DNA from: Haliotis cracherodii | Lineage: Eukaryota | DNA length: 64,000 nucleotides | Reading direction: 5' to 3' | Assembly (NCBI RefSeq): GCF_022045235.1 | Contig: NW_027266286.1 | Coordinates: forward strand, 18,600,001-18,664,000 | In this document: positions 8,632 through 64,000 of the stretch, piece after piece | Layout: the number at the start of each line of letters is the position of its first letter | Numbering within the stretch: position 1 is the stretch's first letter | The notes under the pieces: generated by a model | The model's input: only the letters and a program-made list of their open reading frames with translations | Told to the model about the DNA's origin: nothing | Database searches by the model: none | Program-made: the position numbers and the translations under genes

Positions 8632-8683
8632 CTAATTATGGTATCATTTACACATCATCTTTACGTTTGTTCAATTTCTCCAG

Positions 8684-9124
8684 TAAAGACTCTCCTGAAG
8701 GTGATCATGGATTTATTCGTGGCTGGGTCTGAAACTACATCGACAGCCGTCCGATGGGTTCTAGCGTTGTTTCTCAACTACCCGGATGTTCAGGATAGGT
8801 GTTTTCGGGAGATTGATACGCACATCGGCGTGAACAGACGACCAGGTATGAAGGACAAGGTCAGCCTTCCGTACGTGGAAGCCACGATCATGGAGACCCT
8901 AAGGTACTGCGATATCGCCCCTCTCGCCGCCCCCCACTGTGTCGCGCGGTGTACACAGTTCCGGGGCTACACCCTGCCGGAGGGTGCGTCCGTCATGGTC
9001 AACCTGGACTCCGTGCTACAGGATCAGGGCATCTGGGGGGACCCGCAAAACTTCCGACCAGACAGATTTCTAGACAGTTCAGGAAAAGTATTTAAACCGG
9101 AAGAATTCATTCCATTTTCTATAG
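8684..9124 (+). CDS. Cytochrome P450 gene A, coding exon 3
   Basis: Acceptor TTTCTCCAG|; I-helix 'DLFVAGSETTST', K-helix 'ETLR', 'FRPDRF', 'PFSIG'; donor AG|GTAAGT, phase 1. Confidence 0.95.
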
Positions 9125-9516
9125 GTAAGTAAAAATCGTGCTTGCAATTGCTCCCAAAGCAGCTCTTATTAAACTTTGCTTGGATACAATTATAGAAATA
9201 TGGTGGTTTTCATATTCCTGTCGACACATAGCAGTCAACTCAGCGATTCACTGGGCATGTTTATATAAAGAAGACAGCAATCTATTAGGTTATCTTGGAC
9301 AGAGAATGACCATCAACCATACTCTGCTATGAACTGCCTCACCAGAGAGAGTTTCTTTTACGGATATCACTCTTTTTTATAATACTGTATTTGATACATC
9401 CAAATGATTTTTTGCATGTATAAAAGCAAGATCATATCGGACGTTATTTGTCATATTGATTTTAAGTTTCATTATTTTTTACAATAGTTTAACCGAATGG
9501 TCTCAAATACAATCAT

Positions 9517-9650
9517 GTGGGTAAGGCGTTTTCTCGTCACGCCGACGCCCCGAAAACCGAGTTCCTTAAATGGGTGAAGCCCATTCTCTGTGCCCCTCCC
9601 CGCCCCGTCGTGATATGTGCAAACAGCGGCGTAAAAACAAACTTCTTCAC
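9517..9650 (+). mobile_element. Degenerate SINE family A in P450 intron 3
   Basis: CTCGTCACGCCGA...GAAGCCCATT...GCGGCGTAAAA. Confidence 0.6.
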
Positions 9651-9677
9651 CCGCCCGTGCTTTTTTTTTATTCGCAG

Positions 9678-9853
9678 GGCACCGGGTGTGTCTCGGAGAG
9701 TCTCTAGCCCGGATGGAATTGTTCCTGTTCGTTACCGCCCTGGTTCAAACGTTCCACTTCACGTCCCCCGGTCAACCCCCAACCCTGGAGGGGGTCCTGG
9801 GACTCACATACTTCCCCAAACCATTCGAGGTTATAGCAACAGCAAGAACATAA
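9678..9853 (+). CDS. Cytochrome P450 gene A, coding exon 4 (haem-binding Cys, stop)
   Basis: Acceptor T9-ATTCGCAG|; completes FSIG-HRVCLGESLARMELFLF...PKPFEVIATART, TAA 9851..9853; spliced total 1473 nt = 490 aa with no frameshift. Confidence 0.95.
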
Positions 9854-9989
9854 AACAGGCGTGTCGTTTTGTACTACAATCTGTGACAGCCAGTCGAACA
9901 GGACAGCTGCTATGTAGTAAGCAAAGGTCACGCTTGAGGTCTCGGTTGATGAAACTGTAATTTTCTGAAGTCTTCAGAACCGACCTGAA

Positions 9990-11345
9990 ACTCGCCCAAC
10001 CACCTTCACACTCTCTCGCCCAACCACCTTCAAACTCATTCTCCCAACCACCTATCCATTCTCTCGACAAACCACCTTCAAACTATCTCGCCCAACCACG
10101 TTCGTTCAAGCTCTCTCGCCCAACCACCAAACTCACTCTCCGAAACACCTATCCACTCTCTCGCCCAACCACCTTCAAACTCACCCGCCCAACCACCTTC
10201 AAACTCACTCGCCCAACCACCTTCAAACTCACTCGCCCAACCACCTTCAATCTATCTCGCCCAAGCACCTTCAAACTCACTCGCCCAACCACCTTCAATC
10301 TATCTCGCCCAACCACCTTCAATCTATCTCACCAAACCACCTTCACACTCTCTCGCCCAACCACCTTCAATCTATCTCGCCCAACCACCTTCAATCTATC
10401 TCACCAAACCAGCTTCACACTCTCTCGCCCAACCACCTTCAAACTCACTCGCCAAACCACCTTTAATCTATCTCGCCCAACCACCATCAAACTCACTCGC
10501 CCAACCACCTTCAATCTATCTCGCCCAACCACCTTCACTATCACTCGCCCAAACACCTTCAAACTCACTCGCCCAACCACCTTCAATCTATCTCTCCCAA
10601 CCACCATCAATCTATCTCGCCCAACCACCTTCAAACTCACTCGCCCAACCACCTTCAATCTATCTCGCCCAACCACCTTCAATCTATCTCACCAAACCAG
10701 CTTCACACTCTCTCGCCCAACCACCTTCAAACTCACCCGCCCAACCACCTTCAAACTCACTCGCCCAACCACCTTCAATCTATCTCGCCCAACCACCTTC
10801 AATCTATCTCACCAAACCACCTTCACACTCTCTCGCCCAACCACCTTCAATCTATCTCGCCCAACCACCTTCAATCTATCTCACCAAACCAGCTTCACAC
10901 TCTCTCGCCCAACCACCTTCAAACTCACTCGCCAAACCACCTTTAATCTATCTCGCCCAACCACAATCAAACTCACTCGCCCAACCACCTTCAATCTATC
11001 TCTCCCAACCACCTTCACTATCACTCGCCCAAACACCTTCAAACTCACTCGCCCAACCACCTTCAATCTATCTCTCCCAACCACCATCAATCTATCTCGC
11101 CCAACCACCTTCAAACTCACTCGCCCAACCACCTTCAATCTATCTCGCCCAACCACCTTCAATCTATCTCACCAAACCAGCTTCACACTCTCTCGCCCAA
11201 CCACCTTCAAACTATCTCGCCCAACCACCTTCAAACTCACTCACCCAACCACCTTCAAACTATCTCGCCCAACCACCTTCAAACTATCTCGCCCAACCAC
11301 GTTCGTTCAAACCCTCTCGCCGAACCACCTTCAAACTCTCTCGCT
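9990..11345. repeat. 24-bp minisatellite with 480-bp higher-order duplication
   Basis: Unit CAACCACCTTCAAACTCACTCGCC; near-identical blocks at 10401 and 10881. Confidence 0.95.
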
Positions 11346-12599: not shown

Positions 12600-12876
12600 G
12601 ACCCCTGAAGATTCGGGGGAAGAATAAGTCTTCAGCAACCCATGCTTGCCGTAACAGGTGACTATGCTTGTCGTAAAAGGCGACTAACGGGATCGGGTGG
12701 TCAGGCTCGCTGACTTGGTTGATGCATATCATCGATCCCAATTGCGTGGATCGATGCTCATGACATCAGTCACTGGATTGTCTGGTCCAGACACGATTAT
12801 TTACAGACCGCCGTCATATAACTGGAATATTGCTGAGCGCGGCGTTAAACAACAAACCAACCAACCAACCAATCAA
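12600..12876 (+). mobile_element. SINE-like family D
   Basis: GACCC(G)TGAAGAT...GTCGTAAAAGGCGACTAACGGG...(AACC)n tail. Confidence 0.8.
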
Positions 12877-20199: not shown

Positions 20200-21013
20200 C
20201 TGAGGGCTTACCACTGTTGTGCACAGTAGACTGGTTGTTGACCAGTTGTGAAGATTCCTGTACTGACAGCCCTTTTATAGGCTGATGCTTCTTCCTCCAG
20301 AATATTTGGAACTAATTTTTCAGTTTCATGGGTAGTTGGTTTTACGCCAATGGTTAGATTCCCAAAAGGTTTTATGAACACCCGAATCATACACAGACAT
20401 AAAACGATCTGCGGTATTGGTGTACAGCTGGCAAATAAATTGACTTGATGTGTTTATCATTCTTCACTTCACACTTCAAGTCATCAAGCACTAAGACATT
20501 ATTGTTCCAGGAATCAAAGTAATTGTCATCCTGTAAATTGTAGGGAATGTCTTCACAAATGTCACATAGGGTAACATTTCACTGATTGTCTCGCATAGAG
20601 GTGACCCGGTGAAGATCCGGGGTAGAATAGATCTTCAGCGACCCATGCTTGCTTTAACAGGCGACTATGATTGTCGCAAGAGGCGACTAACGGGATCGGG
20701 TGGTCAGGCTCGTTGACTTAATTGATGCATGTCATCGATCCCAATTGTGTGGATCGATGCTTATGATATTAATCTCTGGATTGTCTGGTCCAGACTCGCT
20801 TATTTACAGACCACCGTCATATAGCTGGAATATTGCTGAGTGCGGCATGAAACAACAAACAAACCAACCAACGTATAGAGGTTTCCAGTCTGTATAACAC
20901 CAGGCGTTGGTGTCATACATCCTGCTTGAAGCACTTGAAAGACATAGTTTTGCCACATCCCCACCCACAAAAGCATCATTAGAAGGGGTGGTTAACTTGA
21001 AGTTACGCATCAT
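20200..21013 (-). pseudogene. Polinton/Maverick-type packaging ATPase remnant, interrupted by a SINE
   Basis: Minus strand: 'FKLTTP..', frameshifted Walker A 'GCGKT' (GGATGTGGCAAAACT), 'WCYTDWKPLY', Walker B 'NNNVLVLDDL'. Confidence 0.7.
20603..20871 (+). mobile_element. SINE-like family D with TSD
   Basis: TSD CG(C/T)ATAGAGGT on both sides. Confidence 0.85.
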
Positions 21014-26391: not shown

Positions 26392-26693
26392 CTGTTTGTT
26401 TATTTGTTTGTTTGTTTGTTTGTTTGTTTGTTCGTTTGTTTGTTGTTTACCGCCACACTCAGCAATGATCCAGCTATAGGAAGGCGGTCTGTAAATAATC
26501 TAGTCGGGACCGGACAATCCAGTAATTAAAATCATGAGCATCGATCCACGCAAATGGGATCGATGACATGCATCAACTAATTCAGCGAGCCTGACCACCC
26601 GATCCCGTTAGTCGCCTCTTGCGACAAGCATAGTCGCATTTGCGGCAAGCTTTGTTTGCTGAAGATTTGTTCTACCCCGGATCTTCACGGGTC
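26392..26693 (-). mobile_element. SINE-like family D
   Basis: Reverse complement of the 20603..20871 type; (TTTG)n tail. Confidence 0.85.
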
Positions 26694-26864
26694 ACCTCTA
26701 TACGAGACAATGAAATACTCTATGTGACATTTGTGAACGACATTCCCTACAATCTACAGGATAACAAGTACTTTGATGCCCGGAACAATAATGTCTTAGT
26801 GCTTGATGACTTGAAGTGTGAAAAACACATCTCTGAACTGTTGACGCGTACCTCTCACCATTGA
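26694..26864 (+). pseudogene. Second fragment of the Polinton ATPase (Walker B region)
   Basis: 'DIPYNLQDNKYFDARNNNVLVLDDLKCEKHISELLTRTSHH'; inverted homologue of ~20450..20602. Confidence 0.7.
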
Positions 26865-29966: not shown

Positions 29967-31437
29967 ATTTATTACCCACGTGGTGAAGATACAGGTGGTA
30001 AGATACTAAATCCGTACGTCACACGTGTGTCGTACAAGGTTGACCTTGTTTTATTCGTTTTGATTGGATAACCGTGACCTCTGTCACACCGGGACTACTT
30101 TTTTCATTCATAAAAAATCGCGAGACGTCATTCATTTTGCGATTACAAGGCAGAACTGAAGAAATTCATGAGAACGAGAGATATTTACAAACACTTTATT
30201 AAACCAAACAAGATAGTCACACGCATCAAATTCGGTTTGCATTCAATATAAGTTATGCATAGAGCTCCTACAGACGTATAATCGAGCTAGATCTATAAAT
30301 CGATTTACAATGTACGACTGCCGATCGAGCGCGTCCCTTGAGCGTGACGCACCCGACCATTTTCGCAACTTTCAATTTGATTTAACGTAAAAGGATAAGC
30401 GTGGTGAAATGAAGTCTGTTTAAACTATCTGGACAGATATCTAGACTTACTTGCGATGATCCGGTTGTGCCATCGGTGTCCCCTTTGAAGCGTATTTTGT
30501 GGCGCTGTTTCGGTAGGTGTTGTTCATGAATGAACGAACACGACAGCACGACCAGATCACTTAAAGTTCACAGTTCCGATAAAAATCATTCGAAAACTCC
30601 GTGGAAGTGTGCCTGACTTCTGATTTTGTGGCCCCAAACATCCCAAATGTGAACAGTAACATTCCCTATCTCTAGCGTAAAATGCTGTGAGTGGATCGCG
30701 GTTGTCTTTTCTTATTACGGTGGCGACCTTGCCCTTCGATCGTTCGAAGCTGTCACTGACATGCAAGCAGACTTGAGTTTGTTGATTTTCACGTCTTCAG
30801 TGAAGGGTGGTACAGTTAACATGAATGTCTTTGGCGAACAGTCTGATTTCCCTCTTCCAAAATGGTACGGACATGATATAAATTCAGCTGATAGATCAAG
30901 GAAACCGAACCATTTTGATTGCACAGACAGGACCCCGGCAGTGTGACCGACTGTTGGTCCGATATTCAAAGCGCGGCGCTAATGTGACATTTCAAATTTT
31001 CTTATCGGTGTCCTGCGTACTAACAACATGGCGCTTGAATTGCCATAAGTTGAAGACTTTCTTCCAAAAGGATCTTGAGCGTCGGTGCTGGTTTGTTTGC
31101 AAACAGAACAGCAGGCGCATGTTGTTAATGCGTATGCATAAACATGTCAACAATGCCCATATTTGGTCATATATCAATATTCATGCGCAACCAGATTTTG
31201 CAACCGGTTTCAGTTTGGTCTGTCAACGAACGAAAGTTGTTATGTATTTACACTTAAATATATATTTAACGTGGGTAATAAATAAAATACCACACTCATT
31301 CTCGTTAGATACCATTTTTACGAAACTCGTGAACTTTCTATGGTATCTGACCTCGCTTTCGCTCGGTCAGATACCATAGAAAGTCCACTCGTTTCGTAAA
31401 AATGGTATCTAACGAGAATGAGTGTAGTATTCTCTAT
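29967..31437. mobile_element. Hairpin-terminated element, module 1 (15-bp IR pair + 146-bp hairpin); possibly non-autonomous Crypton-like
   Basis: ATTTATTACCCACGT 29967..29981 / ACGTGGGTAATAAAT 31269..31283; hairpin 31286..31431. Confidence 0.6.
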
Positions 31438-31470
31438 GTATGTTCTTGTATCAGCGTATATGTATTATGT

Positions 31471-31885
31471 TTTATCATCCAAAACTAGCTCCAACAGGAG
31501 ATATCGCTTGGATTAGATCAAGCGATATCTACACTGTAGATATCGCTGCAATGAAATTACATCACAATGCTTTGCAGACCATTGTGACGTCACCGGTTAC
31601 CATGACGTCACAATCAAATGACATCACTAATGGCACTGCTACTGAAGCTGTTAGCAGTACTTTTTACACTAAAGACACTGCTAATTGCTGTCTACAAATT
31701 GAAAAGTTGGAAGAATGATGTTGGATGATAAATAAAATCTCACCCTCGTGTCTTTTGATATCAAATATATCAACACTCGTTGATAAAAGTGGCAAAAATC
31801 CTCGGCAAGCCTCGGAATTTTCCACTTTTATCAACTCTTGTTGATATATTTGATATCAAAAGACACTCGGGTGAGATTCTCTATT
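31471..31885. mobile_element. Hairpin-terminated element, module 2 (12-bp IR pair + 143-bp hairpin)
   Basis: TTTATCATCCAA 31471..31482 / TTGGATGATAAA 31721..31732; hairpin 31736..31878; its left end recurs at 63960..64000. Confidence 0.65.
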
Positions 31886-37105: not shown

Positions 37106-38050
37106 CATGATGCATTACAACTGTCCAGGACATGATCACCTGTGAACTGACCGAACAACATTCAAGGGTCAGGTAAAGACAATAGGATAGACCACAGTGT
37201 CATGATGCATTACAACTGTCCAGGACATGATCACCTGTGAACTGACCGAACAACATTCACGGGCCAGGTAAAGACAATAGGATAGACCACAGTGCCATGA
37301 TGCATTACAACTGTCCAGGACATGATCACCAGTGATCTGACCGAACAACATTCACGTACCAGGTTAAGACAATAGGAAAGACCACAGTGTCATGATGCAT
37401 TACAAACGTCCAGGACATGATCACCAGTGATCTGACCGAACAACATTCACGTACCAGGTTAAGACAATAGGAAAGACCACAGTGTCATGATGCATTACAA
37501 ACGTCCAGGACATGATCACCTGTGAACTGACCGAACAACATTCACGGGCCAGGTAAAGACAATAGGATAGACCACAGTGTCATGATGCATTACAACTGTC
37601 CAGGACATAATCACCTGTGATCTGACCGAACAACATTCACGGGCCAGGTACAGACAATAGGATAGACCACAGTGTCATGATGCATTACAACTGTCCAGGA
37701 CATGATTACCTGTGAACTGACCGAACAACATTCACGGGCCAGGTACAGACAATAGGATAGACCACAGAGTCATGATGCATTACAACTGTCCAGGACATGA
37801 TCACCTGTGAACTGACCGAACAACATTCACGGGCCAGGTAAAGACAATAGGATAGACCACAGAGTCATGATGCATTACAACTGCCCAGGACATGATCACC
37901 TGTGAACTGACCGAACAACATTCACGAGCCAGGTAAAGACAATAGGATAGACCACAGAGTCATGATGCATTACAACTGTCCAGGACATGATCACCTGTGA
38001 ACTGACCGAACAACATTCACGGGTCAGGTAAAGACAATAGGATAGACCAA
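37106..38050. repeat. 95-bp tandem repeat, ~10 copies
   Basis: Unit starts CATGATGCATTACAACTGTCCAGGACATGATCACC; period 37201 to 37296. Confidence 0.95.
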
Positions 38051-39600
38051 AATGCCAGTGTCTGTTGTGGCGTCCAAGATCATTGGTTAGAGCTTTACAG
38101 CGGCGACCCATGGAGGCAATGACATCCTGGGTTTCGCGTTGAGAAATGTTGCTGCAGTACCACAAACAGTGCCTGGTGCGTTTGCAGGGGTGGATTCCGT
38201 CGGCGCACACGGCGATCCACAGCATCCCGCAGATGCTGAATCAGGGTCAGGCTCGCAGACACGTGCAGTATATGAGGTCGCGCGTTGTCTTGTTTGAAAA
38301 GTCCACCATTGGCGTTAATGAACGTGACGAAGTGACGTTGCAAGATCTCGTCTCGATAGCGGACCGAATTCAATGCACCTACCACATGCCAAAAATCAGT
38401 CCGGCCGCCATGATGGATACCAGACCACACCATGACGCTTCCACCACCAAATCGATCCACCTGTTGCACACTTCGGAGGAGAAAGCGCGACTGTGTGCAC
38501 ATATGTTTCCTTCAACTGTAAATGCAATATCACGCTATATGCGTGATATTGCATTTACTGCACATGATGCCGCATATGTAATTATATGTTTCCTTCAACT
38601 GTGAGATATAGCGTGATATTGCATTTACTGCACATGATGCCGTATATCTAATTATATGTTTCCTTCAACTTTGACATATAGCGTGATATTGCATTTACTG
38701 AACATGATGCCGTGTATCTAATTATATGTTTCCTTCAACTGTGACATATAGCGCGATATTGCATTTACTGCACATGATGCCGTATATCTAATTATATGTT
38801 TCCTTCAACTGTGACATATAGCGTGATATTGCATTTACTGCACATGATGCCGTATATCTAATTATATGTTTGCTTCAACTTTGACATATAGCGTGATATT
38901 GCATTTACTGCATATGATGCCGTATATCTAATTATATGTTTCCTTCAACTGTGACATCGTGATATTGCATTTACTGCATATGATGCCGTATATCTAATTA
39001 TATGTTTCATTCAACTGTGACATCGTGATATTGCATTTACTGCACATGATGCCGTATATCTAATTATATGTTTCCTTCAACTGTGACATATAACGTGATA
39101 TTGCATTTACTGCACATGATGCCGTATGTCTAATTATATGTTTCCGTGTTGCCACTGGTGCGTTCCTATCTTGTTCCGTTAATTTCCTGGCCATTTAAAA
39201 AAGCATTCTGCAAGTGGTTCCAGAGCATTTGAAACATTCCCGACATGCGCAAGTTACTGGAGGCCCGCCGGACACAGGCGGCCGTGGCCGTGGTGTTGGG
39301 AGCAGAATAAGGTAGACTTGAGGCGATAGATAATGGCTGTATGGACATCCAGTGCCATAGCAACCTCATGTGCACTTTCACCATCACAAAGTCGACCAAT
39401 GGCTCTTTTCTCTTTCCAAATATGCCAGTACATATCACAATTTGAACAACAAACGAACAGTGTAAGTACATTGCTGGCTGGGGCATGTCGTGCAGCTTGT
39501 TTTTCAATGCCTTGTAAAACCGTATCCCTTTTGAAAAGCATTTTATTGTCGTTCCGTTTACAGCAGGCACAAAATCACTTTATATATATTTATATACATA
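38051..39600 (-). mobile_element. Second, more decayed Tc1-type transposase split by a 70-bp array
   Basis: 'VDRFGGGSVMVWSGI...RYRDEIL...FKQDNARPH' (38095..38502) and HTH 'RAIGRLCDGESAHEVAMALDVH' (39254..39541). Confidence 0.8.
38500..39145. repeat. 70-bp tandem repeat, ~9 copies
   Basis: Unit CGTGATATTGCATTTACTGCACATGATGCCGTATATCTAATTATATGTTTCCTTCAACTGTGACATATAG. Confidence 0.95.
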
Positions 39601-41449: not shown

Positions 41450-43360
41450 GTTAGTTAACCGCAAGGTGATAGATATGTTGGTCAACTTTATACATGTATG
41501 GACTGAGATAGCTTCAAAGGGATGGCAGTGTGATTGGATTGTTAGTTAACTCACATAGTCTCAAGGTGATGGCAAGGTCATAGATATGTTAATTAATTTT
41601 GTGTATTAAACTCACATAGTCTCAAGGGGATGGCAAGGTCATAGATATGTTGGTTAATTTTGTGTATAGAACTCACAATGTCTCAAGGGACTGGCAACGT
41701 CATAGATATGTTGGTTAATTTTGTGTTTGGAACTCACATAGTCTCAAGGGAATGGCAAGGTCATAGATATATTGGTTAATTTTGTGAATTGAACTTACAT
41801 AGTCTCAAGGGAACGGCAAAGTCATAGAAATGTTGGTTAATTTGGAGTATAGAACTTACATAGTCTCAAGGGAATGGCAAGGTCATAGATATGTTGGTTA
41901 ATGTTGTGTAATGAACTCACATAGTCTCAAAGGAATGGCAAGGTCATAGATATGTTGGTTAATTTTGTGCATTGAACTCACAATGTCTCAAGGGAATGGG
42001 AAGGTCATAGAAATGTTGGTTAATTTTGTGTATGGAACTCACATAGTCTCAAGGGAATGGCAAGGTCATAGGTATGTTGGTTAATTTTGTGCATTGAACT
42101 CACAATGTCTCAAGGGAATGGCAAGGTCATAGATATGTTGGTTAATTTTATGTTTGGAACTCACATAGTCTCAAAGGAATGGCAAGGTCATAGATATGTT
42201 GGTTAATTTTGTGCATTGAACTCACAATGTCTCAAAGGAATGGCAAGTCATAGATATGTTGGTTAATTTTGTGTAAAGAACTGACATAGTCTCAAGGGAA
42301 TGGCAAGGTCATAGATATGTTGGTTAATTTTGTGCATTGAACTCACAATGTCTCAAGGGAATGGCAAGGTGATAGATATGTTGGTTAATTTTGTGTAATG
42401 AACTCACAATGTCTCAAGGGAATGGCAAAGTCATAGAAATGTTGGTTTATTTTGTGTATGGAACTGGCATAGTCTCAAGGGAATAGCAAGGTCATAGATA
42501 TGTTGGTTAATTTTGTGCATTGAACTCACAATGTCTCAAGGGAATGGCAAGGTCATAGATATGTTGGTTAATTTTATGTTTGGAACTCACATAGTCTCAA
42601 GGGAATGGCAAGGTCATAGATATGTTGGTTAATTTTGTGCATTGAACTCACAATGTCTCAAAGGAATGGCAAGTCATAGATATGTTGGTTAATTTTGTGT
42701 AAAGAACTGACATAGTCTCAAGGGAATGGCAAGGTCATAGATATGTTGGTTAATTTTGTGCATTGAACTCACAATGTCTCAAGGGAATGGCAAGGTGATA
42801 GATATGTTGGTTAATTTTGTGTAATGAACTCACAATGTCTCAAGGGACTGGCAAAGTCATAGAAATGTTGGTTTATTTTGTGTATGGAACTGGCATAGTC
42901 TCAAGGGAATGGCAAGGTCATAGATATGTTGGTTAATTTTGTGCATTGAACTCACAATGTCTCAAGGGAATGGCAAAGTGTTAGATATGTTGGTTAATTT
43001 TGTGTATGGAACTCACAATGTCTCAAGGGAATGGCAAGGTCATAGATATGTCGGTTAATTTTGTGTAATGAACTCACAATGTCTCAAGGGAATGGCAAGG
43101 TCATAGATATGTTGGTTAATTTTGTGTATGGAACTCACAATGTCTCAAGGGAATGGCAAGGTCATAGATATGTCGGTTAATTTTGTGAATTGAACTCACA
43201 TAGTCTCAAAGGAATGGCAAGGTCATAGATATATTGGTTAATTTTGTGAATTGCACACACATAGTCTCTAGGGAATGGCAAGGTCATAGATATATTGGTT
43301 AATTTTGTGTATTGAACCCACATAGTCTCAAGGGAATGGCAAGGTCATAGATATGTTGGT
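41450..43360. repeat. 61-bp minisatellite, ~30 copies
   Basis: Unit AACTCACATAGTCTCAAGGGAATGGCAAGGTCATAGATATGTTGGTTAATTTTGTGTATGG. Confidence 0.95.
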
Positions 43361-43459
43361 TTGCCGTCTCTGGTAAACTCATTTGGTATTAAGGGAGCAC
43401 AGGGCGATGGATGTACTTGTTCAGTCTATGTCTTTTTTTTATATTTCAGATTGTACGTT

Positions 43460-43768
43460 ATGGTATCTGAGACACTACTTCTGTTGTTGGCTGTGACCAT
43501 GGCCGCGTTGTCCGACAAGATATGCACGGACGTGGGCAACCTACCATTCCAGAACAACTCGCGCCTCACCCACCACACCTTCCTGTCCATGCACATGTCA
43601 AGTGTTATGATATGTGCCCGGGCTTGCATAAACAGGGGGCGCTGCAAGTCCTTCAACTTCGAACTCTCGTACCGGTCCTGTGAGCTGAACCAGGCCAACT
43701 ACGCCGAGACGGGCGCCCTCAGTAATGACGATTCGTGGGTGTATTATGACATTGCAGGATTCCCTCAG
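43460..43768 (+). CDS. Secreted PAN/Apple + WSC-like Cys-rich protein, coding exon 1 (signal peptide + PAN/Apple domain)
   Basis: MVSETLLLLLAVTMAALS signal-like N-terminus; PAN pattern 'CARAC....CKSFNF.....CELN...WVYY'; acceptor TTTCAG at 43449 just upstream; donor CAG|GTAACA, phase 0. Confidence 0.85.
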
Positions 43769-43869
43769 GTAACATATAATATGATAATGATATAATATTG
43801 TCCACCAAGTCATACAACACGCTCGTTAATACACACACTGTTAAAAAGTACACCTTGTTAAAAAGAAGC

Positions 43870-46800
43870 CATGTAGTACAACACCCAAGTTAATTCAGTA
43901 CACAAGGTAATACAGCACGCAAGTTAATACAGTACACAAGGTAGTATAGCACATCAGGTAACAAACCATATCAAGTAACACAGCACATCAGGTAGAACAT
44001 CACACCAGGGAATATAGCACACAAGGTAATACAACACGCCAGGTAATACAACACGTCATTCAATACAACACAATGTATACAGCACACACGGTAATAAAGC
44101 ACACAAGATAATATAGTACACAAGGTAATACAGTACATCATGTAATGCAGCACACCAGGTAATACAGCACACCAGGTAATAAAGCACACCAGGTAATACA
44201 GCACACAAGGCAATACAGTACATCATGTAATGCAGCACATCAGGTAATACAGCACACCAGGTAATAAAGCACACCAGGTAATACAGCACACAAGGTAATA
44301 CAGTACATCTTGTAATGCAGCACACAAGGTAGTACAGCACACAAGATAATATAGTACACAAGGTAATACAGTACATCATGTAATGCAGCACACCAGGTAA
44401 TACAGCACACCAGGTAATAAAGCACACCAGGTAATACAGCACACCAGGTAATAAAGCACACCAGGTAATACAGCACACAAGGTAGTACAGCACACAAGGT
44501 AGTACAGCACACCAGGTAATACAGCTGATCAAGTAATACAGAGCACAAGGTAGTACAGCACACCAGGTAATACAGCATACAAGGTAATACAGGACACCAG
44601 GTAATACAGCACACAAGGTAATACAGCTGATCAGGTAATACATGTACAGCACATCATGTAATACAGCACACCAAGTCATACAGCAAACAAAGTAATACAG
44701 CACACCGGGTAAAAAAGCACAGCAGGAAATACAGCACTTTAGGTAACACAGCACATCAGGTAACACACTGCACCAGGTAATACAGCACACCAGGTAATAC
44801 AGCACACCAGATAATGATATAAGATTGTCCACCAAGTCATACAACACGCTCGTTAATACACACACTGTTTAAAAGAACACCATGTTTAAAAGAAGCCATG
44901 TAGTACAACACCCAAGTTAATTCAGTACACAAGGTAATACAGCACACAGGGTAATACAGTACACAAGGTAGTATAGCACATCAGGTAACAAACCATATCA
45001 AGTAACACAGCACATCAGGTAGAACATCACACCAGGGAATATAGCACGACTTGGTAATACAGTACACAAGGTGTATAGCACATCAGGTAACAAACCATAT
45101 CAAGTAACACAGCACATCAGGTAGAACATCACACCAGGGAATATAGCACGCTAGGTAATACAGTACACAAAGTGTATAGCACATCAGGTAACACACCATA
45201 TCAAGTAACACAGCACATCAGGTAGAACATCACACCAGGGAATATAGCACGCTAGGTAATACAGTACACAAGGTGTATAGCACATCAGGTAACAAACCAT
45301 ATCAAGTAACACAGCACATCAGGTAGAACATCACACCAGGGAATATAGCACGCTAGGTAATACAGTACACAAGGTGTATAGCACATCAGGTAACAAACCA
45401 TATCAAGTAACACAGCACATCAGGTAGAACATCACACCAGGGAATATAGCACGCTAGGTAATACAGTACACAAGGTAGTATAGCACATCAGGTAACAAAC
45501 CATATAGGGTAACACAGCACATCAGGTAGAACATCACACCAGGGAATATAGCACGCTAGGTAATACAGTACACAAGGTGTATAGCACATCAGGTAACAAA
45601 CCATATCAAGTAACACAGCACATCAGGTAGAACATCACACTAGGGAATATAGCACGCTAGGTAATACAGTACACAAGGTGTATAGCACATCAGGTAACAA
45701 ACCATATCAAGTAACACAGCACATCAGGTAGAACATCACACCAGGGAATATAGCACGCTAGGTAATACAGTACACAAGGTGTATAGCACATCAGGTAACA
45801 AACCATATAGGGTAACACAGCACATCAGGTAGAACATCACACCAGGGAATATAGCACGCAAGTTAATACAGTACACAAGGTAGTATAGCACATCAGGTAA
45901 CAAACCATATCAAGTAACACAGCACATCAGGTAGAACATCACACCAGGGAATATAGCACGCTAGGTAATACAGTACACAAGGTGTATAGCACATCAGGTA
46001 ACAAACCATATCAAGTAACACAGCACATCAGGTAGAACATCACACCAGGGAATATAGCACGCTAGGTAATACAGTACACAAGGTGTATAGCACATCAGGT
46101 AACAAACCATATCAAGTAACACAGCACATCAGGTAGAACATCACACCAGGGAATATAGCACGCTAGGTAATACAGTACACAAGGTGTATAGCACATCAGG
46201 TAACAAACCATATCAAGTAACACAGCACATCAGGTAGAACATCACACCAGGGAATATAGCACGCTAGGTAATACAGTACACAAGGTAGTATAGCACATCA
46301 GGTAACAAACCATATAGGGTAACACAGCACATCAGGTAGAACATCACACCAGGGAATATAGCACGCTAGGTAATACAGTACACAAGGTGTATAGCACATC
46401 AGGTAACAAACCATATCAAGTAACACAGCACATCAGGTAGAACATCACACCAGGGAATATAGCACGCTAGGTAATACAGTACACAAGGTGTATAGCACAT
46501 CAGGTAACAAACCATATCAAGTAACACAGCACATCAGGTAGAACATCACACCAGGGAATATAGCACGCTAGGTAATACAGTACACAAGGTGTATAGCACA
46601 TCAGGTAACAAACCATATAGGGTAACACAGCACATCAGGTAGAACATCACACCAGGGAATATAGCACGCAAGTTAATACAGTACACAAGGTAGTATAGCA
46701 CATCAGGTAACAAGCCATATCAAGTAACACAGCACATCAGGTAGAACATCACACCAGGGAATATAGCACGCTAGGTAATACAGTACACAAGGTGTATAGC

Positions 46801-48260
46801 ACATCAGGTAACAAACCATATCAAGTAACACAGCACATCAGGTAGAACATCACACCAGGGAATATAGCACGCTAGGTAATACAGTACACAAGGTGTATAG
46901 CACATCAGGTAACAAACCATATCAAGTAACACAGCACATCAGGTAGAACATCACACCAGGGAATATAGCACGCTAGGTAATACGGTACACAAGGTGTATA
47001 GCACATCAGGTAACAAACCATATCAAGTAACACAGCACATCAGGTAGAACATCACACCAGGGAATATAGCACGCTAGGTAATACAGTACACAAGGTAGTA
47101 TAGCACATCAGGTAACAAACCATATAGGGTAACACAGCACATCAGGTAGAACATCACACCAGGGAATATAGCACGCTAGGTAATACAGTACACAAGGTGT
47201 ATAGCACATCAGGTAACAAACCATATCAAGTAACACAGCACATCAGGTAGAACATCACACCAGGGAATATAGCACGCTAGGTAATACAGTACACAAGGTG
47301 TATAGCACATCAGGTAACAAACCATATCAAGTAACACAGCACATCAGGTAGAACATCACACCAGGGAATATAGCACGCTAGGTAATACAGTACACAAGGT
47401 AGTATAGCACATCAGGTAACAAACCATATAGGGTAACACAGCACATCAGGTAGAACATCACACCAGGGAATATAGCACGCTAGGTAATACAGTACACAAG
47501 GTAGTATAGCACATCAGGTAACAAACCATATAGGGTAACACAGCACATCAGGTAGAACATCACATCAGGGAATATAGCACGCTAGGTAATACAGTACACA
47601 AGGTAGTATAGCACATCAGGTAACAAACCATATCAAGTAACACAGCACATCAGGTAGAACATCACACCAGGGAATATAGCACGCTAGGTAATACAGTACA
47701 CAAGGTAGTATAGCACATCAGGTAACAAACCATATCAAGTAACACAGCACATCAGGTAGAACATCACACCAGGGAATATAGCACGCTAGGTAATACAGTA
47801 CACAAGGTGTATAGCACATCAGGTAACAAACCATATCAAGTAACACAGCACATCAGGTAGAACATCACACCAGGGAATATAGCACGCTAGGTAATACAGT
47901 ACACAAGGTGTATAGCACATCAGGTAACAAACCATATCAAGTAACACAGCACATCAGGTAGAACATCACACCAGGGAATATAGCACACAAGGTAATACAA
48001 CACATCAGGTAATACAACACGTCATTCAATACAACACACAATGTATACAGCACACAAGGTAATAAAGCGCACAAGATAATACAGTACACAAGGTACTACA
48101 GTACAGATAGATAATATTGCACAGCAGGTAGTACAGCACGCAAGGTAGTACAGCACACAAGCTAATTCAGCGCACCAGGTAATACAGCACATCACGCAAT
48201 ACAGCATATCATATAACACAGCACACCAAGTAATACATCACACCAGGCAAGACAAAACAT
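43870..48260. repeat. ~17-bp degenerate array containing a 101/102-bp higher-order repeat (~30 copies, 44940..47990)
   Basis: Monomer AGGTAATACAGCACACC; HOR period 45241 to 45342. Confidence 0.95.
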
Positions 48261-49119: not shown

Positions 49120-49249
49120 AAAGTGCGACAACAGTGCCAGGGTGTCACTTGTGGTTATAATGAGACGTGCGAGATTTCCTCGTCACTCCAACCAGCCTGT
49201 CACACATGCAGCATCGCAGCAGTCTGTGGAGTATGCTACCCTATCACAG
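49120..49249 (+). CDS. PAN/WSC-like protein, coding exon 2 (Cys-rich, FOLN/EGF-like spacing)
   Basis: Acceptor TTATTTCAG|, phase 0; KVRQQCQGVTCGYNETCEISSSLQPACHTCSIAAVCGVCYPIT; donor CAG|GTAGGT, phase 1; phases match both neighbours. Confidence 0.75.
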
Positions 49250-52200
49250 GTAGGTACACTGTAGACCATGCTTCGCTACCACAGGTAGGTACACTGTACA
49301 CCATGCTTCGCTACCACAGGTAGGTACACTGTACACCATGATTCGCTACCACAGGTAGTTACACTGTACACCATGCTACCCTACCACAGGTAGGTACACT
49401 GTACACCTTGCTACCCTACCACAGGTAGGTACACTGTAGACCATGCTTCGCTACCACAGGTAGGTACACTGTAGACCATGCTTCGCTACCACAGGTAGGT
49501 ACACTGTACACCATGCAACCCCACCACAGGTAGGTACACTGTACACCATGCTACTCTACCACAGGTAGGTACACTGTACACCATGCTACCCTACCACAGG
49601 TAGGTACACTGTACACCATGCTACCCTACCACAGGTAGGTACACTGTACACCATGCTACCCTACCACAGGTAGGTACACTGTACACCATGCTTCGCTACC
49701 ACAGGTAGTTACACTGTACACCATGCTACTCTACCACAGGTAGGTACACTGTACACCATGCTACCCTACCACAGGTAGGTACACTGTACACCATGCTACC
49801 CTACCACAGGTAGGTACACTGTACACCATGCTACCCTACCACAGGTAGGTACACTGTACACCATGCTTCGCTACCACAGGTAGGTACACTGTACACAATG
49901 CTACCCTACCACAGGTAGGTACACTGTACACCATGCTACTCTACCACAAGTAGGTACACTGTAGACCATGCTACTCTACCACAAGTAGGTACACTGTAGA
50001 CCATGCATCGCTACCACAGGTAGGTACACTGTAGACCATGCATCGCTACCACAGGTAGGTACACTGAAGACCATGCTTCGCTACCACAGGTAGGTACACT
50101 GTAGACCATGCTTCGCTACTACAGGTAGGTACACTGTAAACCATGCTTCGCTACCACAGGTAGGTACACTGTAGACCATGCTTCGCTACCACAGGTAGGT
50201 ACACTGTAGACCATTCTTCGCTACCACAGGTAGGTACACTGTAGACCATGCTACCCTACCACACGTAGGTACACTGTACACCATGCTACTCTACCACAGG
50301 TAGGTACACTGTACACCATGCTACTCTACCACAGGTAGTTACACTGTACACCATGCAACCCCACCACAGGTAGGTACACTGTACACCATGCTACCCTACC
50401 ACAGGTAGGTACACTGTAGACAATGCTTCGCTACCACAGGTAGGTACACTGTTGACAATGCTACTCTACCACAGGTAGGTACACTGTACACCATGCTACT
50501 CTACCACAGGTAGGTACACTGTACACCATGCTACCCTCCCACAGGTAGGTACACTGTAGACCATGCTACCCCACCACAGGTAGGTACACTGTACACCATG
50601 CTACTCTACCACAGGTAGGCACACTGTACACCATGCTTCGCTACCACAGGTACGTACACTGTAGACCATGCTACTCTACCACAGGTAGGTACACTGTACA
50701 CCATTCTACTCTACCACAGGTAGTTACACTGTACACCATGCAACTGCACCACAGGTAGGTACACTGTACACCATGCTACCCTACCACAGGTAGGTACACT
50801 GTAGACAATGCTTCGCTACCACAGGTAGGTACACTGTTGACAATGCTACTCTACCACAGGTAGGTACACTGTACACCATGCTACTCTACCACAGGTAGGT
50901 ACACTGTACACCATGCTACTCTACCACAGGTAGTTACACTGTACACCATGCAACTGCACCACAGGTATGTACACTGTACACCATGCTACCCTACCACAGG
51001 TAGGTACACTGTACACCATGCTTCGCTACCACAGGTAGGTACACTGTTGACAATGCTACTCTACCACAGGTAGGTACACTGTACACCATGCTACTCTACC
51101 ACAGGTAGGTACACTGTACACCATGCTACCCTACCACAGGTAGGTACACTGTAGACCATGCTACTCTACCACAGGTAGGCACACTGTACACCATGCTACT
51201 CTACCACAGGTAGGTACACTGTACACCATGCTACCCTACCACAGGTAGGTACACTTTAGGCCATGCTTCGCTACCACAGGTAGGTACACTGTACACCATG
51301 CTTCGTTACCACAGGTAGGTACACTGTAGACCATGCTTCGCTACCTCAGGTAGGTACACTGTACACCATGCTTCGCTACCACAGGTAGGTACACTGTACA
51401 CCATGCTTCGCTACCACAGGTAGGTACACTGTACACCATGCTACCCTACCACAGGTAGGTACACCGTACACCATGCTACCCTACCACAGGTAGGTACACT
51501 GTAGACCATGCTTCGCTACCACAGGTAGGTACACTGTACACCATGCTTCGCTACCACAGGTAGGTACACTGTACACCATGCTACCCTACCACAGGTAGGT
51601 ACACTGTAGACAATGCTACTCTACCACACGTAGGTACACTGTACACCATGCTACCCTACCACAGGTAGGTACACTGTACACCATGCTTCCTTACCTCAGG
51701 TAGGTACACTGTACACCATGCTACTCTACCACAGGTAGGTACACTGTACACCATGTTACTCTACCACAGATAGGTACACTGTACACCATGCTTCGCTACC
51801 ACAGGTAGGTACACAGTAGACCATGCTTCGATACCACAGGTAGGTACACAGTAGACCATGCTTCGCTACCACAGGTAGGTACACTGTACACCATGCTACC
51901 CTACCACAGGTAGGTACACTGTAGACAATGCTACCCCACCTCAGGTAGGTACACTGTGGGTGATAGGCTACACGAGCACAGGTAGGTACAATGTGGATGA
52001 TAGGCTACACGAGCACAGGTAGGTACACTGTGGGTGATAGGCTACACGAACACAGGTAGGTACACTTTGGATGATAGGCTACACGAGCACAGGTAGTTAC
52101 ACTGTGGATGATAGGCTACACGAGCACAGGTAGTTACACTGTGGATGATAGGCTACACGAGCACAGGTAGGTACAATGTGGATGATAGGCTACACGAACA

Positions 52201-52570
52201 CAGGTAGGTACAATGTGGATGATAGGCTACACGAACACAGGTAGGTACACTGTGGGTGATAGGCTACACGAGCACAGGTAGGTACAATGTGGATGATAGG
52301 CTACACGAACACAGGTAGGTACAATGTGGATGATAGGCTACACGAACACAGGTAGGTACACTGTGGACGATAGGCTACATGAACACAGGTAGGTACACTG
52401 TGGATGCTAGGCTACATGAACACAGGTAGTTACACTGTTGATGCTAGGTTACATGAACACAGGTAGGTACACTGTGGATGCTAGGCTACATGAACACAGG
52501 TAGTTACACTGTGGATGCTAGGTTACACGAACACAGGTAGGTACACTGTGGGTGATGTGCTACACGAACA
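49233..52570. repeat. 35-bp array (~77 copies, to ~51955) followed by a related 37-bp array (~17 copies)
   Basis: Units CACAGGTAGGTACACTGTACACCATGCTACCCTAC and CACAGGTAGGTACACTGTGGATGATAGGCTACACGAG. Confidence 0.95.
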
Positions 52571-52904
52571 CAAAGACAATGAAGAGTAGTCTACCCTACA
52601 AAAGATATAGACAATATCGAATATAGACAATGGCAAACAATACCAGTCACATGCTGTGATACACTAGTGTAGAGTGACCGACCACAGGTAGGAACACACT
52701 ATGTGTTACCCTACAGTGTACTGATGGGCGAGTGATGACTGTGTTTGTCGGCGACACAAGGTATTGCATGGCTGGTGACAACAGTAAGTGTACTACGTTC
52801 TACAGCTGTAGAACTATCATCAGGTGACACCTTGTCATCAGTAAAACACCTTGTTATAACACAATATACCCGGCAGGTTAATTCATTTATTCCCCTTTGT
52901 TTAG

Positions 52905-53215
52905 AGGTCGCAGGGAGGCGATACCGATCCTACGGCTGCTTCAAGTCAGCAGGCGGAAATGTCCTGCCAGAACTCCTTGTCAACCTGCGAAACGGCCTTG
53001 ACTGGAATGATCTCACCAAGACGCTGGATGCTTGTGCGCTTGCATCTGCCTCGACGAACAGGGAGTTTTTCGGGATACAGTTCTGGGCTGAATGCTACAT
53101 TGGGAATGCCACCGAGGCCAACTTCCAGACCCCTGTGACCATCAGCGCATGCGCAGATGTGTGCCCGAGTTCTGTTGCTGACGGTTCCTCTACACAGGTG
53201 TATCAGTGGATATAG
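52905..53215 (+). CDS. PAN/WSC-like protein, coding exon 3 (WSC-like domain, stop)
   Basis: Acceptor CCCCTTTGTTTAG|, phase 1; 'YRSYGCF...LDW...C...FFGIQFWAECYIG...C...C...VY'; TAG 53213..53215; spliced total 750 nt = 249 aa. Confidence 0.8.
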
Positions 53216-53750: not shown

Positions 53751-53759
53751 TTATATGTA

Positions 53760-63959: not shown

Positions 63960-64000
63960 TTTATCATCCAAAACTGGCTCCCACGGGAGATATCGCTTGG
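63960..64000 (+). mobile_element. Left end of another copy of hairpin module 2, in P450 gene B intron 1
   Basis: TTTATCATCCAAAACTGGCTCCCACGGGAGATATCGCTTGG vs 31471.. TTTATCATCCAAAACTAGCTCCAACAGGAGATATCGCTTGG (3 differences in 41 nt). Confidence 0.75.

What the first reader, a model, noticed from the sequence alone, without database searches (positions are those of the whole stretch)
29967..31885. Two tandem cassette-like modules with unrelated sequence but the same architecture: IR, body, IR, long hairpin
Seen: module 1 has a perfect 15-bp inverted pair (29967..29981 / 31269..31283) enclosing ~1.3 kb, followed at once by a 146-bp hairpin. Module 2 starts ~35 bp later with a perfect 12-bp pair (31471..31482 / 31721..31732) enclosing ~240 bp, followed by a 143-bp hairpin. 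Both IR pairs read TTTAT...ATAAA, both hairpins are entered by ATAAATAAAAT and left by ATTCTCTAT, yet the IR cores, bodies and stems differ. No TSD or transposase ORF is visible. Inference: a non-autonomous mobile family defined by structure rather than sequence, whose members insert next to each other like cassettes. The closest known concepts are Crypton (tyrosine recombinase) termini with long inverted repeats and Helentron asymmetric IRs; I cannot confirm either.
Basis: partly seen in the sequence, partly recalled or inferred. Interest (0 to 1): 0.85.

Follow-up and report, generated by a model that had tools for sequence, protein, structure and literature searches.

The report
Two adjacent Helentron-type non-autonomous transposons
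The two "cassette-like modules" are real, high-copy, protein-less mobile elements with the end structure of Helentron/Helitron2 rolling-circle transposons, a known kind, and are unusual mainly for a very long (~145 nt) conserved end hairpin and a habit of landing on each other's ends.

Summary
Module 1 (window 29969-31437, 1469 bp) and module 2 (31472-31884, 413 bp) are two unrelated-in-sequence repeat families. Each gives well over a thousand first-look candidates in this 1.18 Gb genome, and the copies read are 91-99.9% identical.

Paralogous empty sites show the elements run exactly from 5'-TTAT... to ...ATTCTCTAT-3', make no target duplication, and insert in front of D-T(-A-T).

The layout is a 5' terminal inverted repeat, a body, a subterminal 3' repeat, then a stem-loop. 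With a 5' T, a 5' hairpin and a T-rich target, this is the published signature of Helitron2/Helentron (HLE2) elements and their non-autonomous derivatives (HINEs, DINE-1-like). The genome holds many uninterrupted OTU-DUF6570-Rep-PIF1-APE Helentron reading frames, but I could not show that any shares these termini.

The "cassette" behaviour is real: 79 precise head-to-tail junctions against 0 in the control. It follows from the element's own 5' TTAT resembling its target.

Crypton is not supported. Two things are new in degree: the ~145-nt hairpin, kept across three families by compensatory changes, and its strand-specific C-TC-G bubbles.

Other first readers of this scan noted Helentron-like elements elsewhere in this genome.

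Verdict: a new member of a known kind, of modest interest.

The parts
29969..31437 (+). Module 1 = non-autonomous HLE2/Helentron-type element (HINE family 'M1'), 1469 bp, 5'-TTATTACCCACG...ATTCTCTAT-3'
   Evidence: Thirty near-full-length copies are 95.2-99.9% identical to it. Its exact ends come from paralogous empty sites in six different contexts. It has no coding capacity.
29969..29981 (+). M1 5' terminal inverted repeat (ATIR/subTIR), TTATTACCCACGT. It contains the CCACGTGG palindrome and pairs weakly with GTGGTAA about 20 nt downstream (the 5' hairpin).
31269..31281 (+). M1 3' subterminal inverted repeat, ACGTGGGTAATAA
   Evidence: pair I5, 100% complementary.
31286..31431 (+). M1 right-terminal hairpin: 146 nt, 67-nt arms, two TC/TC bubbles in C-TC-G context. 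It is entered by ATAAATAAAAT (31278-31288) and left by ATTCTCTAT (31429-31437, the 3' terminus).
31438..31471 (+). 34-bp host spacer between the two elements. Its first four bases, GTAT, are the D-T-A-T target motif retained at M1's 3' junction. Base 31471 (T) is the host base 5' of M2.
31472..31884 (+). Module 2 = non-autonomous HLE2/Helentron-type element (HINE family 'M2'), 413 bp, 5'-TTATCATCCAA...ATTCTCTAT-3'
   Evidence: Thirty copies are 90.8-97.3% identical. Ends come from empty sites. Tandem arrays elsewhere have a period of exactly 413 bp.
31472..31482 (+). M2 5' terminal inverted repeat, TTATCATCCAA. It pairs with TTGGATTAGAT at 31508-31518 to form a 5' hairpin.
   Evidence: z = -5.3 for the 5' 79 nt.
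31721..31731 (+). M2 3' subterminal inverted repeat, TTGGATGATAA
   Evidence: pair I15.
31736..31878 (+). M2 right-terminal hairpin: 143 nt, three TC/TC-type bubbles. It is entered by ATAAATAAAAT (31728-31738) and left by ATTCTCTAT (31876-31884, the 3' terminus).
63960..64000 (+). 5' end of a second M2 copy, cut off by the window end
   Evidence: 41 nt, 92.7% identical to M2 positions 1-41.

Best explanation
Both modules are non-autonomous members of the Helitron-like-element 2 group (Helitron2/Helentron). That makes them HINEs, the same kind of element as Drosophila DINE-1 and the oyster Cg_HINEs.

Inferred mechanism, by analogy with IS91 and Helraiser:
1. A Rep/helicase supplied in trans nicks the top strand at N^TTAT (the 5' end) and unwinds 5'->3'.
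2. It is stopped by the right-end signal: the 3' inverted repeat, which can pair with the 5' repeat, followed by the long hairpin.
3. It nicks after ...ATTCTCTAT^.
4. It joins the ends into a circle with the junction CTCTAT|TTAT.
5. It inserts the strand, without target duplication, into a site that looks like its own 5' nick site, (T)^D-T(-A-T).

Every resident copy offers such a site at its own 5' boundary, and each insertion keeps the host D-T-A-T at its 3' boundary. New copies therefore tend to land exactly on the ends of old ones in the same orientation. That, with or without rolling-circle read-round, gives head-to-tail stacks.

Shown here: the boundaries, the lack of TSD, the target bias, the copy number, the stacking, and hairpin conservation through compensatory changes.

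Inferred: which enzyme acts, which strand is used, and the order of the nicks.
For: Mobility and exact ends:
- More than 1656 and more than 2082 first-look candidates.
- Homology ends at the left IR and at CTCTAT in 58 loci.
- Empty sites exist in six (M1) and two (M2) independent contexts, with zero gap and no TSD.

Architecture equals HLE2. The elements have:
- 13- and 11-nt repeats, terminal at the 5' end and subterminal at the 3' end;
- a stem-loop straight after the 3' repeat;
- a 5' T;
- a 5' hairpin involving the 5' repeat.
These are compared with PMC3627910, PMC4067079 and PMC11417382.

Target:
- The 5' flank is T in about 70-85% of copies.
- In unbiased genome counts for M1 (n = 423), +2 is T in 84%, +2..+4 is TAT in 53%, and +1 is C in 0.9%.
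- For M2, T at +2 in 34/34 and +1 never C.

The matching enzyme is present. There are at least 31 Helitron_like_N hits, many in open frames of 2600-3200 aa. Their domains are OTU/Herpes_teg_N-DUF6570-Rep-PIF1-Exo_endo_phos; DUF6570 marks HLE2 and APE marks Helentron.

Stacking:
- 79 precise M2-end|LTS junctions against 0 in the control, including an array of 413-bp period.
- M1 inserted into M1, at the 5' edge of another family, and at the 3' edge of M1.
- 11 of 58 loci carry a second copy within 1.5 kb.

The hairpin is under constraint. M1, F3 and M2 hairpins align in register. 38 of 65 pairs are kept by double changes, and the TC/TC bubbles are conserved.
Against: - No Rep-encoding copy with these termini was found. 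The Helentron copies I could read extend beyond the DNA I was allowed to fetch, so their true ends are unknown. The modules share no sequence with the parts I hold.
- The hairpin (143-146 nt) is many times longer than published HLE2 stem-loops. This puts the 3' repeat about 155 bp from the end instead of 20-60 bp.
- The target is T^D-T-A-T rather than a simple T^T.
- The top-scoring loci used for flank and clustering statistics may be biased. The queries included a few flank bases, and loci with two copies offer more words. I corrected the flank statistics with count-only pattern searches. I could not correct the 11-of-58 clustering figure.
Confidence: 0.8

Rival explanations
1. Chimeric origin. 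The long hairpin would not be the Helentron terminator but a separate palindromic foldback MITE. It would have landed at an AT/TA in the short 3' tail (...ATAAATAAA-AT-TCTCTAT) of an ancestral HINE and has travelled with it since.
For: - This genome has an abundant stand-alone palindromic element of the same size. F5 (L078:2062-2204) has at least 3379 candidates. It has a clean empty site and a TA duplication where it sits in the 3' region of a Helentron.
- In M1, M2 and F3 the hairpin is flanked by AT...AT. Removing it leaves the same sequence in all three.
Against: - M1, F3 and M2 hairpins align in register with shared bubbles, shared loop motifs and compensatory stem changes. They therefore diverged from one hairpin inside the element rather than arriving separately.
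- 1131 exact in-context occurrences exist.
- No hairpin-less right end and no solo M1/M2 hairpin appeared in any sequence I held or among the top hits.
- This rival concerns origin only. It does not change what the elements are now.
Confidence: 0.1
2. Site-specific recombination of a circular form by a tyrosine recombinase (Crypton-like or integron-attC-like). Crossover would occur in a short core shared by the element junction (TTAT) and the target (DTAT), with the bubbled hairpin acting as a folded single-strand recombination site.
For: - There is microhomology between the element's 5' TTAT and the target D-T-A-T.
- The hairpins are imperfect, with conserved extra-helical or mismatched bases on one strand.
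- The elements form cassette-like arrays.
Against: - The same microhomology is expected for HUH enzymes, which recognise donor and target nick sites alike.
- The asymmetric terminal repeat plus 3' stem-loop is diagnostic of HLE2, not of Cryptons. Cryptons lack terminal inverted repeats (statement in PMC3627910).
- Intact HLE2 Rep/helicase genes are abundant here.
- I did not search the genome for tyrosine recombinases, so their absence is not shown.
Confidence: 0.04
3. An HUH single-strand transposon read on the opposite strand, in the style of IS200/IS605 or IS91. The hairpin end would be the origin or left end, cleaved 3' of a flanking ATAH tetranucleotide. The element would end in ...ATAA on that strand.
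For: - The conserved flanking tetranucleotide lies only at the hairpin end.
- In IS91 and IS608 the conserved target tetranucleotide abuts one specific end, and it resembles the sequence cleaved at the other end (my knowledge of those families, not tested here).
Against: - This changes strand and polarity, not the class. It would still be an HUH rolling-circle element of the Helitron kind.
- No IS200/IS605-type transposase is known from animal genomes, and none was sought here.
- The top-strand excess of CTCG in the hairpin does not by itself tell which strand is used.
Confidence: 0.05

Closest known systems
HINEs / DINE-1-like elements: non-autonomous Helentrons (Thomas, Vadnagara & Pritham 2014, PMC4067079; oyster Cg_HINE, Vojvoda Zeljko et al. 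2020, PMC7492417)
   Same: - 11-15-nt subterminal inverted repeats, with the 5' one within a few bases of the end.
- A short inverted repeat complementary to the 5' repeat just inside it.
- A palindrome after the 3' repeat.
- No TSD and a T-rich target.
- No coding capacity and very high copy number.
- Internal short repeats that vary in number (M2).
- Families defined by their repeats and right ends rather than by their bodies.
   Different: - The right-end palindrome here is 143-146 nt, against stems of about 5-10 bp in mites and short palindromes in oysters. The 3' repeat therefore lies about 155 bp from the end.
- The target is T^D-T-A-T rather than T^T.
- There is no microsatellite or long central tandem array in these two copies.
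- No autonomous partner with shared termini has been shown.
Helitron2 group as defined by Bao & Jurka 2013 (PMC3627910); HLE2 in HELIANO (Li et al. 2024, PMC11417382)
   Same: - Asymmetric terminal inverted repeats.
- A 5' hairpin built from the 5' repeat.
- The 3' repeat lies immediately upstream of the 3' hairpin.
- The element starts with T.
- Compensatory changes keep the structures.
[quoted passage not shown]
   Different: Published 3' repeats lie about 20-30 bp from the end. Here the hairpin is roughly five times longer and carries conserved TC/TC bubbles, which those papers do not describe.
Helraiser / canonical Helitron1 (Grabundzija et al. 2016, PMC4778049)
   Same: - A right-end hairpin acts as terminator.
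- Circular intermediates have a precise head-to-tail junction.
- No TSD.
- Tandem arrays of whole elements are known for Helitrons (PMC12001565).
   Different: Helitron1 has 5'-TC / CTRR-3' ends, no terminal inverted repeats, and an A^T target. None of these is seen here.
Crypton (tyrosine-recombinase transposons)
   Same: No TSD, and a short sequence shared between the element end and the target.
   Different: Cryptons have no terminal inverted repeats and no terminal hairpin. No recombinase link was found or needed.

Membership tests
HLE2 (Helitron2/Helentron) non-autonomous elements = HINE | Short (about 8-18 nt) inverted repeats placed asymmetrically: the 5' one 0-4 nt from the 5' end, the 3' one subterminal | tested here: met
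   M1 has a 13-nt and M2 an 11-nt perfect repeat, each starting at base 1 of the element. The 3' arms lie upstream of the hairpin.
HLE2 (Helitron2/Helentron) non-autonomous elements = HINE | Stem-loop/palindrome immediately downstream of the 3' repeat, close to the 3' end | tested here: met
   The hairpins start 2-4 nt after the 3' repeat and end 6 nt before the terminus. Their length (143-146 nt) is far beyond published examples.
HLE2 (Helitron2/Helentron) non-autonomous elements = HINE | 5' hairpin / internal IR complementary to the 5' repeat | tested here: met
   For M2, ATCATCCAA pairs with TTGGAT..GAT at 31508-31518 (z = -5.3). For M1, TTACC.AC pairs with GT.GGTAA but the fold is not better than shuffles. 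The feature is clear for M2 and weak for M1.
HLE2 (Helitron2/Helentron) non-autonomous elements = HINE | No target-site duplication or modification | tested here: met
   Paralogous empty sites are zero-gap and carry no duplicated bases, in eight independent contexts.
HLE2 (Helitron2/Helentron) non-autonomous elements = HINE | Insertion between T and T (T-rich target); element begins with T | tested here: inconclusive
   The element begins TTAT. The 5' flank is T in about 70-85% of copies. The 3' flank has +1 = A/G/T (C in 0.9%) and +2 = T (84% for M1, 34/34 for M2), so the target is T^D-T, not strictly T^T.
HLE2 (Helitron2/Helentron) non-autonomous elements = HINE | [quoted passage not shown] | tested here: inconclusive
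   HLE2-type RepHel-APE frames are abundant and uninterrupted. Their termini lie outside the DNA I could fetch. The parts I hold share nothing with M1/M2.
Helitron1 (canonical Helitron) | 5'-TC ... CTRR-3' ends, A^T target, no terminal inverted repeats | tested here: not met
   The ends are TTAT...CTCTAT, inverted repeats are present, and the 5' flank is mostly T.
Crypton | Encodes or depends on a tyrosine recombinase; no terminal inverted repeats; short direct repeats at the ends from crossover in a shared core | tested here: not met
   Inverted repeats and a terminal hairpin are present. The TTAT (element) and DTAT (target) are not identical copies: in the window TTAT sits at the 5' end and GTAT at the 3' end. 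No recombinase gene was searched for.
Cut-and-paste MITE (DDE transposase) | Symmetric terminal inverted repeats and a fixed-length target-site duplication | tested here: not met
   The repeats are asymmetric and there is no TSD. By contrast, the unrelated F5 palindrome in this genome does show a TA duplication.

The most novel reading that the evidence does not exclude
The ~145-nt right-end hairpin may be a structure-coded protein recognition site peculiar to this Helentron lineage.

Its geometry and its C-TC-G bubbles are preserved across sequence-unrelated families by compensatory change, at the cost of base pairing. Both arms read CTCG on the same strand: 5-7 CTCG against 0-1 CGAG per hairpin.

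Together with a donor-like target (^DTAT resembling ^TTAT), this would make the elements self-targeting. They would build ordered head-to-tail arrays of mixed families, a eukaryotic rolling-circle analogue of attC-defined cassette arrays and a direct route from transposon to satellite DNA.
Probability: 0.3. Interest if true: 0.55.

Novelty: new member of a known kind. Interest (0 to 1): 0.3.

Why it matters
The finding itself is ordinary transposon annotation. It assigns two very abundant repeats, and at least one more family, of this genome to the Helentron/Helitron2 group. It also explains why they pile up.

Three by-products could interest people who study rolling-circle transposition:
- There is no biochemical model yet for how HLE2 enzymes read their ends. 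These families offer a natural mutational series: three hairpins with different stems but the same bubbles, loop motifs and flanks.
- The extended target D-T-A-T mimics the element's own 5' end. This gives a simple, testable rule for self-targeting and for the birth of whole-element tandem arrays (413-bp period).
- Many Rep-helicase-endonuclease frames of 2600-3200 aa are uninterrupted, which suggests the system may still be active in this species.

Tried and rejected
**Finding the autonomous partner**
- I fetched six 10-kb pieces next to Rep hits.
- An apparent common 3' end of one Helentron family (L076:3505) turned out to be only the start of a variable, tandemly repeated 3' region. Homology continues past the end of what I hold.
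- No inverted repeat links the 5' and 3' pieces I hold.
- Result: no partner linked. This is not evidence of absence.

**A long hairpin 8-9 kb downstream of Rep in four Helentron copies**
- It first looked like the Helentron's own terminator.
- It is instead a separate palindromic element with a TA duplication and an empty site in another copy. Rejected as a link.

**The ATTCTCTAT match upstream of the ORF in L075/L077**
- It has no hairpin before it. Chance match.

**Coding capacity of module 1**
- blastx against the Helentron protein pieces found nothing, and the ORFs are short.

**Rfam**
- Only sub-threshold matches to long plant miRNA precursor models, far below gathering scores. Not an RNA family.

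**Reads**
There was therefore no test of insertion polymorphism or circles.

**First flank statistics**
- The NTAT figure of 24/24 for M1 was biased, because my query included 8 flank bases. I replaced it with count-only pattern searches.

**Organism identity**
- There is no clear host gene in the window; the ORFs lie in minisatellites.
- An atlas look-up of the Helentron protein gave only "Eukaryota" relatives.

**Not available or not attempted**
Full report

Yes. Every feature is present at the given coordinates.
- The perfect 15-nt inverted pair is at 29967-29981 / 31269-31283, and the perfect 12-nt pair at 31471-31482 / 31721-31732.
- The two long hairpins are at 31286-31431 and 31736-31878.
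- As single-stranded DNA they fold at -64.6 and -52.1 kcal/mol. Shuffles average about -11 and -10, giving z = -22 and -17.
- Both are entered by ATAAATAAAAT and left by ATTCTCTAT.
- The combined pattern ATAAATAAAAT-N(125-150)-ATTCTCTAT occurs 1131 times in the genome, against 2 for the reversed control.

**2. Are they repeats, and where do they end?**

The window lies in a 1.18 Gb assembly of 80 contigs.
- Searching each hairpin region against the genome gave 1656 and 2082 first-look candidates. The 40 scored each time were 97-100% identical.
- In the 58 loci returned, homology to the window begins at the left IR and ends a few bases after the hairpin, for both modules.
- Thirty near-full-length copies of module 1 are 95.2-99.9% identical to the window copy (median 97.8%). 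Thirty copies of module 2 are 90.8-97.3% identical (median 96.6%).

Some copies sit inside other repeats, so uninterrupted paralogues of their insertion sites were present among the sequences I held.
- For module 1, six independent contexts give a zero-gap empty site. Examples are gct^atatgac, ggattta^gtatctt, aaagct^gtatgtt, gag^ttatgtc and ctctat^gtatttt.
- For module 2, two contexts do so: gaagaccta^ttctacc and tatatttac^ttcttat.

These fix the elements as 5'-TTATTACCCACG...ATTCTCTAT-3' (window 29969-31437, 1469 bp) and 5'-TTATCATCCAA...ATTCTCTAT-3' (31472-31884, 413 bp). There is no target-site duplication.

Module 1 has no significant ORF and no similarity to the Helentron protein. Both modules are therefore non-autonomous.

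**3. What the architecture is**

Each element has four features:
- an 11-13-nt repeat starting at its very first base;
- the complementary repeat near the 3' end;
- a stem-loop immediately after that repeat, then six more bases to the terminus;
- a short internal sequence complementary to the 5' repeat, which can form a 5' hairpin (M2: 31474-31482 with 31508-31518, z = -5.3; M1 weak).

This is the published description of Helitron2:
- [quoted passage not shown];
- "3'-ATIR subterminal, immediately upstream from the hairpin";
- "5' T" (PMC3627910).

[quoted passage not shown] Those have 12-15-bp subTIRs 2-4 nt from the 5' end, a palindrome near the 3' end, a T-rich target and no target modification (PMC4067079; oyster Cg_HINE, PMC7492417). 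The same layout is used as the HLE2 search model in HELIANO (PMC11417382).

**4. Is the matching enzyme in this genome?**

Helitron_like_N (PF14214) hits 31 places, most of them in uninterrupted frames of 2600-3200 codons.

Pfam on the pieces I could read gives the order Herpes_teg_N/OTU, DUF6570, Helitron_like_N, PIF1 helicase, Exo_endo_phos. According to HELIANO, DUF6570 marks HLE2, and Exo_endo_phos with Herpes_teg_N marks the Helentron subgroup. An atlas look-up puts the C-terminal half among eukaryotic PIF1/Exo_endo_phos/Helitron clusters.

I could not show that any of these copies carries the modules' termini.
- The apparent common 3' end of one family is only the edge of a variable, tandemly repeated 3' region.
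- Homology among copies runs past the DNA I hold.

The partner is therefore unlinked, not excluded.

**5. Target and stacking**

The 5' flanking base is T in roughly 70% (M1) and 85% (M2) of copies.

My first 3' flank table for M1 was biased, because the query included eight flank bases. I replaced it with count-only searches anchored on the last 21 bases of M1 (423 junctions in all):
- 357 have T at +2 and 66 do not (84%);
- 224 have TAT at +2..+4 (53%);
- only 4 have C at +1.

M2 copies whose alignments stopped exactly at the terminus, and so were unselected for flank, also all have A/G/T then T. The target is thus (T)^D-T, extended to D-T-A-T for M1.

This resembles the element's own first bases, TTAT. 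Consistent with that:
- M1 is found inserted exactly at the 5' edge of another family (L009 against L030);
- M1 is found exactly at the 3' edge of another M1 (L007 against L028);
- M1 is found inside M1 (L008).

Genome-wide, the junction of an M2-type terminus directly followed by an M1- or M2-type start (GATTCTCTAT|TTATYAYC) occurs 79 times against 0 in the control. This includes four hits 413 bp apart on contig C23, that is, a tandem array of whole M2 elements.

In my 58 loci, 11 carry a second copy within 1.5 kb, where well under one would be expected. That sample may favour loci with two copies.

In the window itself the two modules are not abutted: 34 bp of host DNA separate them.

Precise head-to-tail junctions, circles and tandem arrays are known for Helitrons (PMC4778049; PMC12001565). 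The behaviour is therefore expected for this class.

**6. The hairpin**

Scanning everything I held for long palindromes found a third family with the same flanks. This is F3 (L030:739-896, minus strand), with entry ATAAATAAAAT and exit ATTCTATAT. The scan also found deletion derivatives and a symmetric fold-back derivative.

- M1, F3 and M2 hairpins align in register. 38 of 65 predicted pairs are kept through changes on both sides.
- The unpaired positions are conserved: 2x2 TC/TC bubbles, each flanked by C:G and G:C, so that both arms read C-TC-G, and an apical CCTCG...CTCGG.
- Across 65 copies the top strand carries 4.9 (M1), 5.8 (M2) and 7 (F3) CTCG, against 1.0, 0 and 0 CGAG. A plain palindrome would have equal numbers.

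I read this as selection on one strand of a folded right-end signal. That reading is inference. Palindromes can also keep pairing by intrastrand repair.

The hairpin is about five times longer than any HLE2 stem-loop described in the papers I read. This and the bubbles are the only parts of the finding I would call unusual.

**7. A look-alike that is something else**

A 143-nt palindrome lies 8-9 kb downstream of Rep in four Helentron copies. It has at least 3379 candidates of its own.

In another Helentron copy the same site is empty: GGAATAATAA-TA-ATATTAAATC. This fits a TA duplication. It is a separate fold-back MITE, not the Helentron terminator.

It prompts the rival idea that the M1/M2/F3 hairpin began as such an insertion. 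Three observations argue against that for the present elements:
- the hairpins align in register;
- they occur in an invariant context;
- no hairpin-less right end appeared in what I hold.

**8. Other rivals**

- A cut-and-paste MITE is excluded by the asymmetric repeats and the lack of TSD.
- Canonical Helitron1 is excluded by the ends and the target.
- Crypton-type recombination is not needed and does not predict the repeat-plus-hairpin layout. I did not search for recombinases.
- Reading the element on the other strand (hairpin end as origin, as in IS91/IS608 logic) cannot be excluded, but would not change the class.
- Rfam gives only sub-threshold matches to long plant miRNA precursors.

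**9. Verdict**

However, the class is known: HLE2/Helentron non-autonomous elements.

I rate it a new member of a known kind, with confidence 0.8 and interest 0.3. The more novel reading is a structure-coded, bubble-bearing terminator plus a self-mimicking target that builds mixed arrays. I give it about 0.3 probability.

Other first readers of this scan flagged Helentron-like elements elsewhere in this genome, and the same hairpins' TC/TC bubbles. I verified the bubbles and the second M2 copy at 63960-64000, but not their other claims.

Noticed in passing
L078:2062-2204 (genome C80:18487061-18487203); empty counterpart L076 about 760-800 and 2480-2520: This is a separate, very abundant (at least 3379 first-look candidates) palindromic element of about 132-143 nt with 65-nt arms. 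It is inserted with an apparent TA duplication in the 3' region of four Helentron copies, and the same site is empty in another copy. It looks like a fold-back MITE of a cut-and-paste family, not part of the Helentron ends.
   Followed up: partly
Genome places listed, e.g. C9:22245910, C34:37607120, C23:43103777, C14:2931809 (loci L061-L078): More than 20 Helentron Rep/helicase/APE reading frames of 2600-3200 codons have no stop. Their domain order is Herpes_teg_N/OTU-DUF6570-Rep-PIF1-Exo_endo_phos. The elements are long (over 17 kb) with tandemly repeated 3' regions, and may still be active.
   Followed up: partly
Genome C23:29642890-29644146 (coordinates only): Four precise M2-end|M2-start junctions are spaced exactly 413 bp apart. 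This is a tandem array of whole M2 elements, that is, satellite-like DNA made of a transposon. Further clusters lie on C5:34484883-34526631.
   Followed up: no
window about 12600-12830, 20600-20880, 26420-26700; also L075:5475-5800 and many loci: This is an abundant interspersed repeat that itself contains a hairpin of about 100 nt. It served as the host site for both an M1 (L023) and an M2 (L035) insertion and supplied most empty sites. It is not classified.
   Followed up: no
window 31581-31614 and 29975-30035: M2 carries two TGACGTCA (CRE-like) palindromes 22 bp apart. M1 carries CACGTG (E-box-like) palindromes in and next to its 5' repeat. Thousands of copies would scatter such motifs through the genome.
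   Followed up: no
L009:1958-2095: This is a perfectly symmetric fold-back derivative of the F3 right end: the exit motif ATTCTATGTATTAC is present on both sides and the entry motif is missing. It suggests hairpin-mediated template switching or inversion.
   Followed up: no
window 1697-11344, 37106-39145, 41548-48247, 49233-62635: The window is unusually dense in minisatellites with periods of 14-405 bp, tens to hundreds of copies each. All long ORFs in the window lie in them, and no clear host gene was seen.
   Followed up: no
L075:526-4023 and L077:1-4105: About 4 kb of 287/397-bp tandem repeats lie directly upstream of two 97%-identical Helentron copies. It is unclear whether they are part of the element.
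   Followed up: no
M2 copies in L034, L037, L038, L041, L051, L056, L059 compared with window 31522-31547: Some M2 copies carry an extra copy of an internal segment of about 26 bp around the AGATATCGCT palindromes. This is variation in internal short-repeat number, as is typical of HINEs.
   Followed up: no
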